Sequence record: NC_042056.1
Strand: one strand, 5' to 3'
Length of the DNA stretch: 64,000 nucleotides
Positions 4,200 through 5,557 of this stretch are shown piece by piece (position 1 is the first letter of the stretch; each line of letters begins with the position of its first letter). The translations under genes were made by a program, and so were the position numbers. The notes below the pieces were generated by a model that did not search any database, was not told the DNA's origin, and saw only the letters and a program-made list of their open reading frames with translations.

Positions 4200-4205
4200 A
4201 ACAAT

Positions 4206-4425
4206 GGTACCTGTCACAGCAGCCCTTGAGGCTTACGCGATGATGACTGGTCGCCCATTTTACCGGGTAACACATTCCTGCCAGCGCGCTATTGCCGCGA
4301 AGGTTTGCCCCCGGTGTTGTGCGTTATTCGGGTCTACCCACCATCTGCGGATGGTGCGTTGATGTCTCGATATACGCCATAGGGACGCCTTGAGAACTCC
4401 GTGAAATTCGGAGAGGTACCACCCA
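4206..4425 (+). ncRNA. ~220-nt RNA with tRNA-like acceptor stem and T-arm
   Basis: GGTACCT(4206-12)/AGGTACC(4414-20), immediately preceded by CTCCG-TGAAATT-CGGAG; ends ACCCA. Confidence 0.6.
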
Positions 4426-4500: not shown

Positions 4501-4576
4501 GGTGCTATCGTCTAGTGGCCGAGGATACTACCCTGTCACGGTAGAGACCGGAGTTCGATTCTCCGTAGCACCGCCA
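4501..4576 (+). tRNA. trnD: tRNA-Asp (GTC)
   Basis: Canonical cloverleaf, CT-GTC-AC, CCA. Confidence 0.95.
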
Positions 4577-4584
4577 TTTTCAAA

Positions 4585-4660
4585 TGCGTCTTAGCTCAGT
4601 TGGTAGAGCGCACCCCTGATAAGGGTGAGGCCACTGGTTCAAGTCCAGTAGATGCAACCA
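4585..4660 (+). tRNA. trnI: tRNA-Ile (GAT)
   Basis: Canonical cloverleaf, CT-GAT-AA, CCA. Confidence 0.95.
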
Positions 4661-4667
4661 GTATTGC

Positions 4668-4744
4668 ATTCCCGTCATCTAGTTGGTCCAGGATACGACA
4701 CTTTCACTGTCGGTACACGAGTTCAAATCTCGTCGGGAATACCA
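4668..4744 (+). tRNA. trnE: tRNA-Glu (TTC)
   Basis: Canonical cloverleaf, CT-TTC-AC, CCA. Confidence 0.95.
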
Positions 4745-4749
4745 TTTGT

Positions 4750-4840
4750 AGAGAATTGACTGAGTTGGTTTAAGGTGCTCCCCTGCTAAGGGAGTGTATG
4801 CGAAAGTGTACCATTGGTTCGAATCCAATATTCTCTGCCA
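4750..4840 (+). tRNA. trnS: tRNA-Ser (GCT)
   Basis: CT-GCT-AA, long variable arm, G discriminator, CCA. Confidence 0.95.
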
Positions 4841-4841
4841 T

Positions 4842-5015
4842 GTTCTCTTGCTGTGGGAAATAGAAGCGAACGTAGAAACGCCGGTTAGCTCAAAGCTTAG
4901 AGCGTCTCATCTTCGGATGAGAAGGTTGGGGGCGCAACCCGAAATCCCTATCGGCAACGGCCTGCTTGTCAGGATTAGAAACATCTACGTGGATGGGTAC
5001 TTCTACAGCAAGAAC
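4842..5015 (+). ncRNA. ~175-nt RNA containing a tRNA-like domain with a UUCG-capped anticodon arm
   Basis: 13-bp terminal stem (4846-58/5001-13) and a 7-bp inner stem enclosing a cloverleaf at 4879-4957. Confidence 0.65.
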
Positions 5016-5018
5016 AAA

Positions 5019-5140
5019 ACAGTGGGAGCATTGTCCACTGTGACACCGGCAAAGGTTTCGACCTTGCGGGTTGGGCGGAAGCCCGATGTTCCCCCGAACG
5101 CTGGCCTTCTGGCCAATACAGTGAAAGCTTACCCTTGCCG
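5019..5140 (+). ncRNA. putative structured RNA
   Basis: Several hairpins, two with UUCG and GGAA tetraloops, closed by CGGCAA/TTGCCG. Confidence 0.4.
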
Positions 5141-5221
5141 ATGATCACCTCTTCTGCTGCTGCCAACACACTGTATAACCAGAATCAGTCCTGCCTTAAA
5201 TGGCAAGCGTTCACCCTTTAC

Positions 5222-5299
5222 GTTTCCTCAAGGCGGCTTGGGGTGTTATCTCTCGGCTCTGTTGGGTAACATCGTGGTTCAACTCCATGGGAAACACCA
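5222..5299 (+). tRNA. tRNA-like RNA / pseudo-tRNA without a canonical anticodon loop
   Basis: GTTTCC/GGAAAC acceptor, TTCAACT T-loop and CCA, but a 9-bp arm with a 12-nt loop. Confidence 0.6.
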
Positions 5300-5305
5300 A
5301 ACAAT

Positions 5306-5397
5306 GGCTCCGTAGCTAAATCGGTAGAGGCAGACTTTAATTAGTTCTCCAACGATTTTATAATCGCGTGGTGTAGGTTCAAGTCCTACCGGAGCAA
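5306..5397 (+). pseudogene. degenerate class II (Leu-like) tRNA
   Basis: Acceptor, D-region and T-arm are present. The anticodon arm has a 6-nt TTAATT loop and there is no CCA. Confidence 0.55.
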
Positions 5398-5474
5398 GAG
5401 CACTGCTGTTAAGTTGGTTAACACCCGACCCATACTCGGATATTCGCACGTTCGATTCGTGCCAGTGCTCGCCC
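5398..5474 (+). tRNA. tRNA with CAT anticodon (Met or Ile2), atypical
   Basis: CC-CAT-AC loop (C at 33), 8-bp acceptor pairing, GTTCGAT T-loop; ends GCCC. Confidence 0.7.
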
Positions 5475-5481
5475 TTATTTA

Positions 5482-5557
5482 GACTCTGTAGTTCAGTTGG
5501 TAGAACGGTGGACTGTTAATCCATATGTCGCAGGTTCGAGTCCTGCCAGAGTCGCCA
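5482..5557 (+). tRNA. trnN: tRNA-Asn (GTT)
   Basis: Canonical cloverleaf, CT-GTT-AA, CCA. Confidence 0.95.

What the first reader, a model, noticed from the sequence alone, without database searches (positions are those of the whole stretch)
4842..5015. tRNA-like domain with its anticodon loop replaced by cUUCGg, nested in a long terminal stem (Y-RNA-like topology)
Seen: the acceptor-like helix GCCGGT/ATCGGC has a C1:A72 mismatch, as in initiator tRNA. The D-arm is TAGCTC..GAGC, the arm TCTCATC-TTCG-GATGAGA has no anticodon, the T-loop is enlarged, and there is no CCA. It is enclosed by ACGTAGA/TCTACGT (4870-76/4984-90) and a 13-bp terminal stem. Established: bacterial YrlA Y RNAs join a tRNA-like module to a long terminal stem. 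I do not see the canonical Ro60-binding sequence. Inference: a tRNA-shaped decoy resistant to anticodon nucleases, or a Y-like adaptor RNA.
Basis: partly seen in the sequence, partly recalled or inferred. Interest (0 to 1): 0.75.

Follow-up and report, generated by a model that had tools for sequence, protein, structure and literature searches.

The report
tRNA-shaped non-decoding RNA in phage tRNA array
A jumbo Erwinia phage carries, inside its tRNA gene cluster, a highly conserved 174-base RNA gene (wrongly annotated as a protein) in which a tRNA-derived cloverleaf that cannot read codons sits inside a long hairpin; it is real and new, but it is not a Y RNA and its job is still unknown.

Summary
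The window is Erwinia phage Machina/Huxley (Machinavirus, nucleus-forming jumbo phage). The unit (U1, 4842-5015) is the best-conserved stretch of the tRNA array (97.7-99.4% identical in four relatives). All stem substitutions keep pairing. In pEa_SNUABM_43 the anticodon-equivalent arm is swapped for a different, still complementary hairpin with a CUAGC loop. A covariance model built from U1's core finds the neighbouring true tRNA-Ile (E 2e-4), so the core looks tRNA-derived. It cannot decode: it has no 7-nt anticodon loop, no G18G19/TΨC loops and no free CCA end. Salmonella phage SPAsTU carries the same outer hairpin without the 136-nt insert, and GUGG repeats flank the insert. U1 is one of at least five anticodon-less tRNA-like or minihelix units packed like tRNA genes in this array, and some of them recur in other phage genera. 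The Y-RNA reading fails its tests: no YrlA model hit, no TROVE gene annotated in a close relative, no conserved D/T-loop nucleotides. The annotated CDS gp16 is not conserved as a reading frame. My best reading is a processed, stable tRNA-mimic RNA that binds a tRNA-recognising factor. The function itself is inferred, not shown.

The parts
4842..5015 (+). U1: the whole 174-nt structured RNA unit (the finding). It lies directly after tRNA-Ser(GCU) and 8 nt before unit U2.
   Evidence: It is 97.7-99.4% identical in pSal04, pEa10, pEa6 and metagenome contig L013.
4846..4858 (+). P1 5' strand. It pairs with 5001-5013 to give 13 bp.
   Evidence: The A->G change at 5010-5011 in pEa43 and pEa6 turns U-A into U.G.
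5001..5013 (+). P1 3' strand.
   Evidence: Window 4989-5012 is 24/24 identical to the simple hairpin of Salmonella phage SPAsTU (E 2e-3).
4859..4869 (+). 5' side of the internal loop between P1 and P2 (AAUAGAAGCGA). It is invariant in all six sequences.
4991..5000 (+). 3' side of the internal loop (GGAUGGGUAC). In SPAsTU the part UGGGUAC belongs to the apical loop of the hairpin.
4870..4876 (+). P2 5' strand (ACGUAGA). It pairs with 4984-4990.
   Evidence: It never varies.
4984..4990 (+). P2 3' strand (UCUACGU).
4879..4957 (+). The tRNA-derived cloverleaf. It has a 7-position acceptor (C.A plus 6 bp), U8 A9, a 4-bp D stem with an 8-nt loop lacking GG, G26, a 7-bp arm, a 5-nt variable loop, a 5-bp T stem with a 12-nt loop, and A73.
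   Evidence: Model R1, built from 4870-4990, hits tRNA-Ile(GAU) at 4576-4684 with 21.5 bits and E 2e-4. ARAGORN and Rfam tRNA do not call it.
4905..4922 (+). The anticodon-equivalent arm, UCUCAUC-UUCG-GAUGAGA. It is the only variable part of U1.
   Evidence: In pEa43 it is replaced by CUUACC-CUAGC-GGUAAG. pSal04 has C->U giving U.G.
4928..4949 (+). The T-like arm: GGGGG / 12-nt loop CGCAACCCGAAA / UCCCU.
   Evidence: In pEa43, G.U becomes A-U at the first pair.
4961..4973 (+). Small hairpin CCUG-CUUGU-CAGG between the cloverleaf and the P2 3' strand.
   Evidence: It is invariant.
4857..4992 (+). The 136-nt segment that is absent from the SPAsTU hairpin. It is bounded by a GUGG direct repeat (4853-4856 and 4989-4992).
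   Evidence: plus direct reading.
5024..5093 (+). Context unit U2: a 70-nt cloverleaf with a 9-bp terminal helix and all three loops reduced (CACUGU, UUCG, GGAA).
   Evidence: Homologues occur in Seoulvirus and Erskinevirus. In Asesino it stands alone between tRNA-Ile and tRNA-His and is followed by CCA.
5096..5216 (+). Context unit U3: a multi-branch domain closed by GAACGCU/AGCGUUC, with a T-arm-like hairpin UGCC-UUAAAU-GGCA and an ACCC tail. It contains the core sequence most conserved across Machinavirus.
   Evidence: GAACG/CGUUC changes to GGACG/CGUCC in Caitlin, which is compensatory.
5221..5299 (+). Context unit U4: a tRNA-like RNA with a mini D hairpin, a long arm without an anticodon, a canonical T arm and an encoded ACCA.
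   Evidence: The acceptor covaries across genera.
4206..4424 (+). Context unit K: a roughly 220-nt structured RNA with terminal helix GGUACCU/AGGUACC, an adjacent 5-bp hairpin and an ACCC tail.
   Evidence: z -4.2. Homologous 3' parts occur in Kwan and pEa29.

Best explanation
U1 is a discrete non-coding RNA gene of the phage's tRNA operon, not a protein gene and not a tRNA. Its outer part is a 13-bp hairpin that also exists alone in Salmonella phage SPAsTU. Its inner part (136 nt) is a self-closed domain made of a 7-bp helix, a cloverleaf derived from an elongator-type tRNA, and a small hairpin. The cloverleaf keeps the tRNA stems and their lengths (7/4/5 bp, 5-nt variable loop, 12-bp acceptor/T stack). 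It has lost everything needed for decoding or charging: the anticodon loop, G18G19, TΨC and a free CCA end. I infer that U1 is transcribed with the tRNAs and is cut out by the host's tRNA-array processing enzymes, like its neighbours K, U2, U3 and U4, which carry acceptor-like terminal helices and ACCA/ACCC tails. I further infer that it accumulates as a stable tRNA-shaped RNA that binds a factor which recognises tRNA bodies, acting as a mimic, decoy or adaptor. Under this reading the specific contact surface is the invariant loops (internal loops, D loop, enlarged T loop), and the anticodon-equivalent arm is only a strut of fixed length. Shown here: the structure, its conservation, the similarity to tRNA, the non-decoding nature and the array context. 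Inferred: transcription, processing, stability and the protein-binding role.
For: The element lies in a tRNA array on the tRNA strand.

The annotated ORF gp16 is broken by a 1-nt indel in relatives, and the relatives do not annotate it.

U1 is the most conserved segment of the array: 1-4 changes in 174 nt, against up to 13 changes per tRNA gene.

All substitutions in stems keep pairing. The one-sided ones give G.U or A-U on the + strand only.

The pEa43 arm swap keeps a 6-7-bp hairpin of the same total length while the sequence and the loop change.

Model R1 aligns U1's acceptor, D arm, arm, variable loop and T stem to the true tRNA-Ile.

SPAsTU has the hairpin without the insert.

The neighbouring units show the same design and recur, re-ordered, in Seoulvirus and Erskinevirus with compensatory changes.

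Precedents exist. T4 makes two stable RNAs of unknown role from its tRNA region (PMC3014915). RNase P processes several non-tRNA RNAs (PMC11143913). YrlA shows that tRNA mimics can be protein adaptors (PMC4201824).
Against: No expression, end-mapping or binding data exist for these phages.

Statistical covariation is weak.

The high identity could partly reflect recent lateral spread within a mosaic array rather than selection.

The D/T elbow that most tRNA-binding proteins and RNase P read is remodelled, so body mimicry is incomplete.

P2 sits only 2-3 nt from the acceptor and may block RNase P.

No candidate partner protein was found next to the array or in the relative's annotation.

The element is confined to one small clade, so it is dispensable for related phages.
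Confidence: 0.45

Rival explanations
1. Processing or punctuation element. The embedded tRNA-like fold, the long P1/P2 duplex, or both, only recruit RNase P, RNase Z/E or RNase III to cut the polycistronic tRNA transcript. This would resemble plant mitochondrial t-elements, mascRNA/MALAT1, or the stems that flank rRNAs. The pieces would have no function in trans.
For: U1 sits between tRNA-Ser and further units with spacers as short as those between tRNAs. The 12-bp acceptor/T stack and A73 are kept. P1+P2 give about 20 bp interrupted by an internal loop, like known RNase III sites (own knowledge). t-elements and non-tRNA RNase P substrates are documented.
Against: A cleavage signal does not need 174 nt with invariant loops. 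Related phages (ChrisDB, Caitlin, pEa4) process the same array without U1. U1 is more conserved than the tRNAs it would serve.
Confidence: 0.2
2. U1 is the 5' domain of one large ornate RNA (U1-U4, about 460 nt, 4842-5299). This would be functionally akin to ROOL or GOLLD, which are phage RNAs found near tRNA islands and which sometimes carry tRNAs in a linker.
For: The whole 460 nt is conserved and densely structured with only 2-10-nt linkers. ROOL and GOLLD are phage RNAs near tRNA islands, and tRNAs sometimes lie in the GOLLD linker. The D loop of U1 holds a 6-nt palindrome (AAGCUU) that could mediate self-association (direct reading).
Against: Each unit is closed by its own terminal helix. 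Units occur separately and in other orders in other genera: U2 alone between two tRNAs in Asesino, and U4 without U1 in ChrisDB. No inter-unit pairing was found. There are no Rfam ROOL or GOLLD hits. The MFE of the whole region is not unusual (z -1.2).
Confidence: 0.12
3. A tRNA-shaped decoy for anticodon nucleases (VapC, PrrC, RloC type). It would bind the nuclease through the tRNA body but could not be cut, because the anticodon loop is replaced.
For: Phage tRNAs are thought to counter tRNA-targeting defences (PMC10264068, listed). The acceptor end C1.A72, G2-C71, C3-G70, A73 is the same as in initiator tRNA (own knowledge), which is the VapC target (reference list seen). Several neighbouring tRNA-like units also have altered anticodon arms.
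Against: Known anticodon nucleases recognise the anticodon stem-loop itself (own knowledge), and that is exactly what U1 lacks. The arm is the one region free to vary. The tRNA elbow is not preserved. No experiment bears on this.
Confidence: 0.1
4. A Y RNA (YrlA/Yrn1-like) that tethers host or phage Ro60/Rsr to a partner.
For: The topology is a terminal stem plus a tRNA-like module, in the Yrn1-like order D-AC-T. AGCGAACG at 4865-4872 is one mismatch from the GNCGAAN0-1G motif. Salmonella, the host of one relative, encodes Rsr (PMC4201824).
Against: There is no RF02553 hit at E<=10. No TROVE gene appears in the relative's Pfam/CDD annotation or next to the array. The D and T loops lack the conserved tRNA nucleotides that define YrlA. 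A one-mismatch match to so short a motif is expected by chance about once in 174 nt (own estimate).
Confidence: 0.05
5. A decaying tRNA pseudogene or insertion scar with no function, or a real small protein gene (gp16).
For: The arrays of these phages hold several aberrant tRNA-like genes that come and go between close relatives, and a homing endonuclease is present in one array. Machina annotates a CDS at 4848-5144.
Against: U1 is the best-conserved part of the array. Stems are maintained through substitutions and through a whole-arm replacement. The ORF is frameshifted by an indel in pEa10, pEa43, pEa6 and L013 and is not annotated in four relatives.
Confidence: 0.06

Closest known systems
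Bacterial Y RNAs (S. Typhimurium/M. smegmatis YrlA; D. radiodurans Yrn1), Rfam RF02553
   Same: A non-decoding tRNA-like module is joined to a stem formed by the RNA's two ends. Arm order and the position of the terminal stem match Yrn1. Some Y RNAs are encoded by phages (PMC4201824).
   Different: U1 gives no model hit and has no Ro60 gene nearby. YrlA keeps the canonical D/T-loop nucleotides (substrates of DusA and TruB) and has the permuted order T-AS-D. U1 has a remodelled elbow and lies in a tRNA array, not beside rsr.
Phage T4 RNAC and RNAD (stable RNAs from the T4 tRNA region)
   Same: They are small stable non-tRNA RNAs encoded inside a lytic phage's tRNA cluster, and their function is unknown (PMC3014915).
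   Different: No sequence similarity was detected: blastn of U1-U4 against 50,697 phage records finds only Machinavirus. The structures were not compared here.
tRNA-like processing elements: mascRNA/MALAT1, plant mitochondrial t-elements
   Same: They are tRNA-shaped folds without decoding capacity, embedded in a longer transcript and read by RNase P and RNase Z.
   Different: They are eukaryotic or organellar, and they keep a recognisable T loop. The Rfam mascRNA model hits only true tRNAs here. U1's cloverleaf is enclosed by two extra helices.
ROOL and GOLLD large ornate RNAs
   Same: They are phage or prophage RNAs of unknown function near tRNA islands, and GOLLD can carry tRNAs in a linker.
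   Different: No Rfam hits were found. U1 is far smaller, and the surrounding 460 nt looks like separate units rather than one fold.
tmRNA tRNA-like domain
   Same: It is a tRNA mimic lacking an anticodon.
   Different: The tmRNA tRNA-like domain is built from the 5' and 3' ends, is charged with alanine (G3.U70) and has a canonical T loop and CCA. ARAGORN and Rfam find no tmRNA here, and no conserved tag frame exists.
Engineered 'tRNA scaffold' RNAs (own knowledge: Ponchon and Dardel 2007)
   Same: A tRNA body is kept for processing and stability while the anticodon arm is replaced by another hairpin. Neighbouring units U5 and the phiEaH2/Asesino 'tRNA-Ile(aat)' carry 40-65-nt inserts at exactly that place.
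   Different: Those are artificial constructs. In U1 the replaced arm is a plain hairpin, and the whole body is itself nested in another hairpin.

Membership tests
Y RNA / YrlA (RF02553) | Scores against the family covariance model | tested here: not met
   No hit at the gathering threshold or at E<=10 on 4700-5500. The model is active in the library: a 22.9-bit sub-threshold hit falls on a tRNA dimer in L028.
Y RNA / YrlA (RF02553) | Encoded beside, or together with, a Ro60/Rsr (TROVE) gene | tested here: not met
   No TROVE, RtcB or RNA ligase appears in the Pfam/CDD-based annotation of the whole genome of the close relative pSal-SNUABM-04. Ten ORFs flanking the array give no relevant Pfam family. 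Machina's remaining ORFs were not scanned individually.
Y RNA / YrlA (RF02553) | D and T loops keep the invariant tRNA nucleotides that allow the elbow contacts | tested here: not met
   The D loop is AAAGCUUA (no GG). The T loop is the 12-nt CGCAACCCGAAA (no UUC-purine-A).
Y RNA / YrlA (RF02553) | GNCGAAN0-1G motif in the 5' strand of the Ro-binding helix | tested here: not met
   The nearest match, AGCGAACG (4865-4872), has one mismatch and spans an internal loop and P2. A near-match of this kind is expected by chance.
Y RNA / YrlA (RF02553) | Bound and stabilised by Ro60 | not testable with these tools
   This needs immunoprecipitation from infected cells.
tRNA (RF00005) | Recognised by tRNA detectors | tested here: not met
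   ARAGORN and Rfam tRNA at E<=10 give nothing at 4879-4957.
tRNA (RF00005) | Cloverleaf with canonical stem lengths and linkers | tested here: met
   The acceptor has 7 positions (first one C.A), then U8 A9, a 4-bp D stem, G26, a 5-nt variable loop and a 5-bp T stem. The reciprocal model hit to tRNA-Ile has E 2e-4.
tRNA (RF00005) | 7-nt anticodon loop with U33, and a free 3' CCA end | tested here: not met
   The loop is a 4-nt UUCG (5-nt CUAGC in pEa43) on a 7-bp stem. The 3' side continues as ACGG into a hairpin and P2.
tmRNA | Detected by ARAGORN or Rfam; tRNA-like domain formed from both ends; tag reading frame | tested here: not met
   Searches find nothing. No frame-conserved stop is seen across relatives (reading).
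ROOL / GOLLD | Scores against the family covariance models | tested here: not met
   No hits.
ROOL / GOLLD | Phage-encoded, next to tRNA islands | tested here: met
   This is a contextual feature only.
T4 RNAC/RNAD-type stable RNAs of phage tRNA clusters | Non-tRNA RNA gene inside a phage tRNA cluster | tested here: met
T4 RNAC/RNAD-type stable RNAs of phage tRNA clusters | Sequence relatedness to the T4 RNAs; accumulation as a stable RNA | tested here: not met
   blastn (distant mode) finds no T4-like record. Stability cannot be tested with these tools.

The most novel reading that the evidence does not exclude
Nucleus-forming jumbo phages of Erwinia, Salmonella and Proteus (Machinavirus, Seoulvirus, Erskinevirus) encode a previously undescribed repertoire of non-decoding 'tRNA-scaffold' RNAs: U1, U2, U3, U4, K and the aberrant U5 type. 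These would be matured by the tRNA machinery and would keep a tRNA-like body or minihelix. Their anticodon arm is deleted, capped by a tetraloop or replaced by variable inserts. Together they would form a dedicated RNA-based system, for example to titrate or redirect tRNA-recognising host defence or processing factors, or to mark RNAs for transport out of the phage nucleus. U1 would be its most elaborate member.
Probability: 0.25. Interest if true: 0.8.

Novelty: new variant of a known kind. Interest (0 to 1): 0.6.

Why it matters
Why phages carry tRNA genes has been debated for fifty years, and the answers offered are codon supply and escape from tRNA-targeting defences. These arrays also contain conserved RNAs that look like tRNAs but cannot decode. 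They are annotated as spacers, hypothetical proteins or odd tRNAs such as 'tRNA-Ile(aat)'. If they are stable and bind tRNA-recognising factors, tRNA mimicry would join the known phage strategies, and it would do so in phages that wall off their DNA in a nucleus-like shell. The practical consequences are smaller. gp16 of Machina, Huxley and Parshik should be re-annotated as ncRNA. Several tRNA calls in these genomes are not decoders. U1's natural design, a tRNA body nested in a hairpin with a freely exchangeable arm, is a ready-made scaffold for RNA engineering.

Tried and rejected
Known families. Rfam at gathering and at E<=10 on the region and on four related loci gave only tRNAs. ARAGORN found no tmRNA or tRNA at U1. 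I considered RNase P RNA (the motif ACAG...GCUUAC in U3 recalls CR-V) and tmRNA (T loop UUCAACU, ACCA end). I dropped both because there are no model hits, the 3' tRNA-like unit has its own covarying 5' acceptor strand, and no tag frame is conserved.

Wider homologues. Exact-pattern scans of IMG/VR (four scans), JGI metagenomes (one) and GTDB genomes (one) returned only the same phage clade plus one metagenome contig, L013. A 17-mer from the 5' internal loop gave six IMG/VR hits, all in unrelated coding sequence, so they are chance matches.

Model search. Model R1 found no U1-like element in ChrisDB, Caitlin, pEa4, pEa9, phiEaH2, Kwan, pEa29 or SPAsTU.

Transcription signals. The sigma-70 promoter and terminator scan was uninformative, with counts at shuffle level. 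This phage also uses its own RNA polymerases.

Partner proteins. Pfam on ten neighbouring ORFs gave only DUF7484.

Coding reading. gp16 is rejected because of the indel.

DNA-level hairpin reading. It was considered because the reverse strand folds as well. I rejected it because of the G.U pairs, the one-sided changes to G.U and the tRNA homology on the + strand.

Inter-unit pairing. A search by eye for pairing between units (for example the U4 loop GGCUCU) found nothing convincing.

Literature. Searches found no description of these RNAs.
Full report
Identity of the window. blastn places the region at 100% identity in Erwinia phages Machina and Huxley (and 99.9% in Parshik). These are 241-kb Machinavirus genomes, and window coordinates equal Machina coordinates. 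The genome carries split multisubunit RNA polymerases and phiKZ-like head proteins, so it is a phiKZ-like jumbo phage. The finding lies in the phage's tRNA array, which ARAGORN and Rfam show as Tyr, Asp, Ile, Glu, Ser ... Ile(aat)?, Asn, all on the + strand. Specifically it sits in a 460-nt tRNA-free stretch (4841-5304). Machina annotates that stretch as hypothetical protein gp16 (4848-5144), while four relatives leave it unannotated.

The observation. Reading the sequence confirms every element at the stated coordinates; the full map is in the field 'parts'. MFE folding of the single sequence, RNAalifold on six homologues and the pEa43 homologue alone all return the same architecture. That architecture is P1 (13 bp), an 11/10-nt internal loop, P2 (7 bp), and then a multiloop holding a cloverleaf and a 4-bp hairpin.

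The cloverleaf fits the canonical tRNA frame closely:
- C1.A72 followed by six pairs;
- U8 A9;
- a 4-bp D stem;
- G26;
- an 18-nt arm where tRNA has 17 nt;
- the 5-nt variable loop AGGUU;
- a 5-bp T stem GGGGG/UCCCU;
- A73.

What is not tRNA-like is the loops. The D loop is AAAGCUUA (no G18G19), the arm loop is UUCG, the T loop is a 12-nt CGCAACCCGAAA, and there is no CCA. It is supported by pEa43, where the first G.U becomes A-U, whereas the alternative stem UUGGG/CCCGA would be broken by the same change.

Is it more than chance? Thermodynamics is not decisive. The z-score is -2.8 for the + strand but -3.9 for the reverse complement. Formal covariation is also weak, because only six nearly identical sequences exist. 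On those, 98% of cells pair (36-52% if partners are slid), but there is only one formally compensatory pair, and 88 of 500 column shuffles do as well. Four other lines carry the case.

(i) Conservation. U1 differs by 1-4 bases in 174 from pSal-SNUABM-04, pEa_SNUABM_10, pEa_SNUABM_6 and a metagenome contig. In the same comparisons the flanking true tRNA genes differ by up to 13 bases in 76-86, and the gp20 CDS is 81-92% identical.

(ii) Every substitution inside a helix keeps the pair. The five one-sided ones create G.U or A-U on the + strand, and they would be A.C mismatches on the other strand.

(iii) In pEa43 the whole anticodon-equivalent arm is replaced. Fourteen of the fifteen differences fall in 24 nt, yet the new sequence again forms a 6-7-bp hairpin of the same overall length, with a CUAGC loop. 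The arm's shape is therefore kept, while its sequence and the cUUCGg loop are not.

(iv) A covariance model built from 4870-4990 finds the genuine tRNA-Ile(GAU) next door at 21.5 bits, E 2e-4, aligned arm for arm. It also finds a tRNA-Asp of ChrisDB at E 0.085. The core therefore resembles a tRNA arm for arm and is most simply read as tRNA-derived, although tRNA detectors do not call it.

Not a protein gene. A 1-nt indel at about 5068 (GGUUUCG-ACC versus GGUUUCGUACC) shifts the gp16 frame in pEa10, pEa43, pEa6 and L013. The substitutions follow helices, not codons.

Origin of the nesting. Salmonella phage SPAsTU (Seoulvirus) has, in its tRNA array, a plain hairpin whose stem and loop are the P1 stem and the 3' internal-loop sequence of U1. 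Twenty-four consecutive bases are identical to window 4989-5012 (E 2e-3). Relative to it, Machina has 136 extra nucleotides (4857-4992) in the apical loop, bounded by a GUGG direct repeat. U1 is therefore an older hairpin plus a self-closed insert (P2, cloverleaf, small hairpin). Equally, SPAsTU may have lost the insert by recombination between the repeats; the direction cannot be decided. No other record in 50,697 phage genomes has either form.

Context. The 460 nt are not one featureless spacer but a run of units, each closed by its own terminal helix and packed as tightly as the tRNA genes.
- U2 (5024-5093) is a 70-nt cloverleaf with a 9-bp terminal helix whose three loops are reduced to CACUGU, UUCG and GGAA. 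Its helices show compensatory changes within the clade (GGGAGCAUU/GAUGUUCCC to GGGAGUAUU/GAUACUCCC). It recurs in Seoulvirus and Erskinevirus. In Asesino it stands alone between tRNA-Ile and tRNA-His and is followed by CCA.
- U3 (5096-5216) is a multibranch domain closed by GAACG/CGUUC, which becomes GGACG/CGUCC in Caitlin. It has a T-arm-like hairpin next to the 3' strand and an ACCC (in Caitlin, ACCA) tail. It contains the 35-nt core that is the most conserved sequence across all Machinavirus.
- U4 (5221-5299) is a tRNA-like RNA with a mini D hairpin, a canonical T arm, an encoded ACCA, and an 'anticodon' arm whose loop differs in every lineage. Its acceptor covaries across three genera.
- Unit K (4206-4424) is a further RNA of about 220 nt with the same acceptor-like helix, adjacent hairpin and ACCC design.
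- The 'tRNA-Ile(aat)' at 5305-5398 has about 40 nt in place of the anticodon arm. Its counterparts carry a tetraloop-capped stem (SPN3US-type Proteus phage 7, pSal04) or 39-65-nt inserts (SPAsTU, phiEaH2, Asesino).

Anticodon-less tRNA bodies are thus a recurring theme of these arrays, and U1 is the most elaborate case. Units occur singly and in different orders in other genera. That argues that they are separate RNAs rather than domains of one 460-nt molecule. I keep the single-molecule reading as a rival because ROOL and GOLLD set a precedent for large phage RNAs at tRNA islands that can carry tRNAs.

The Y-RNA interpretation. The comparison is fair in topology. In D. radiodurans Yrn1 the terminal stem takes the acceptor position and a short 'anticodon arm' lies between D- and T-like arms, whereas YrlA is permuted (PMC4201824). 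The defining features fail, however:
- there is no RF02553 hit even at E<=10;
- the D and T loops lack the invariant nucleotides on which YrlA's tRNA mimicry rests;
- the GNCGAAN0-1G motif is matched only with a mismatch, in the wrong structural place;
- no TROVE, RtcB, RNA-ligase or CCA-enzyme gene appears in the Pfam/CDD-annotated genome of the close relative pSal-SNUABM-04 or among the ORFs flanking the array.

A host Rsr could still be the partner in Salmonella, but nothing points to it.

Mechanism. What is shown is an RNA-level, + strand, tRNA-derived, non-decoding structure under strong constraint everywhere except the anticodon-equivalent arm. It lies in an operon whose other non-tRNA units mimic the acceptor/T minihelix and the CCA end. 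From that I infer co-transcription with the tRNAs and release by the usual array-processing enzymes. RNase E cutting in the spacers and RNase P cutting at acceptor-like helices are established for tRNA operons and for several non-tRNA RNAs (PMC11143913). I also infer accumulation as a stable RNA. The pattern of constraint (invariant single-stranded loops, exchangeable arm) fits a specific binding surface presented on a tRNA-shaped frame, that is, a mimic, decoy or adaptor for a tRNA-recognising factor. I put this at about 0.45. The rivals, with their weights, are:
- a pure processing signal (0.2);
- a domain of one large RNA (0.12);
- a Y RNA (0.05);
- junk or a CDS (0.06).

Novelty and value. 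The closest documented parallel in kind is the pair of stable RNAs of unknown role from the T4 tRNA region (PMC3014915). The closest in design are Y RNAs and tRNA-like processing elements. U1 belongs to none of them by sequence or model and is absent from Rfam 15. I rate it a new variant of a known kind (tRNA-mimic ncRNA). Its distribution is very narrow: one subclade of Machinavirus plus one metagenome contig. It is made more interesting by the wider, multi-genus set of anticodon-less units around it.

Noticed in passing
window 5024-5093 (U2); L028 1267-1345, L027 1365-1443, L029 903-980, L030 906-984: A 70-79-nt cloverleaf RNA with a 9-bp terminal helix and all three loops reduced (its long arm ends in UUCG or AUUCGNA, its T-like arm in GGAA). 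It is conserved in Machinavirus, Seoulvirus (about 20 Salmonella SPFM phages, Proteus phage 7) and Erskinevirus. In Asesino it sits alone between two tRNAs and is followed by CCA. It is unannotated everywhere.
   Followed up: partly
window 5096-5216 (U3) and 5221-5299 (U4); L006-L009, L025, L027: A multibranch RNA with an ACCC/ACCA tail is followed by a mini-D-arm tRNA-like RNA whose 'anticodon' loop differs in every lineage. The 35-nt core at 5181-5215 is the most conserved sequence across Machinavirus. The U4 type is also present in phiEaH2 and pEa_SNUABM_29, with covarying acceptor stems.
   Followed up: partly
window 4206-4424: Another unannotated structured RNA of about 220 nt (MFE z -4.2). 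It has terminal helix GGUACCU/AGGUACC, an adjacent 5-bp hairpin with a 7-nt loop, and an ACCC tail. Its 3' part (GAGAACUCCGUGAAAUUCGGAG...) recurs in Kwan and pEa_SNUABM_29.
   Followed up: partly
window 5305-5398: The gene called tRNA-Ile(aat) (Rfam 31 bits) has about 40 nt, forming two small hairpins, in place of the anticodon arm. ARAGORN calls the L013 and pEa6 versions 'tRNA-???'. Counterparts in other phages have either a tetraloop-capped stem or 39-65-nt inserts. It is probably not a decoder.
   Followed up: partly
window 5399-5473: An unannotated tRNA(CAU) (Rfam 38.9 bits in the local search). ARAGORN and the Machina annotation miss it in this window, but relatives annotate it as tRNA-Met.
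   Followed up: no
L004 2160-2740 (pEa_SNUABM_6): An HNH-type homing-endonuclease-like ORF (172 aa) is inserted in the T loop of the U4 tRNA-like unit. It replaces 21 nt, including the 3' acceptor strand and the CCA. Evidently this phage tolerates loss of U4.
   Followed up: partly
window 4201-4206, 5301-5306; many sites in L006-L009, L025-L030: The spacer (A)ACAAUG recurs immediately upstream of the non-canonical units (K, U2, U3, U4, U5 types) in several genera, but not upstream of most ordinary tRNAs. It may be a shared processing signal or a trace of common descent.
   Followed up: no
L002 1647-1752 and L005 ~1400-1500: pSal04 and pEa43 carry one more aberrant class-II-like tRNA-like gene directly upstream of U1 (acceptor GCCGGUG/UACCGGC, ACCA end, loop GUAAAAG). 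ARAGORN does not call it. Its acceptor resembles that of the U1 cloverleaf.
   Followed up: no
window 4892-4899 and 4937-4941 / 4994-4998: The D loop of U1 contains the 6-nt palindrome AAGCUU flanked by A residues, which could mediate a kissing dimer. The T-loop ACCCG is complementary to UGGGU in the 3' internal loop, which could form a pseudoknot. Both sequences are invariant, so neither idea can be tested by covariation.
   Followed up: no
window 4848-5144: The annotated CDS gp16 (Machina, Huxley, Parshik) overlaps U1, U2 and part of U3 and is frameshifted in relatives. It should be removed or re-annotated as ncRNA.
   Followed up: yes
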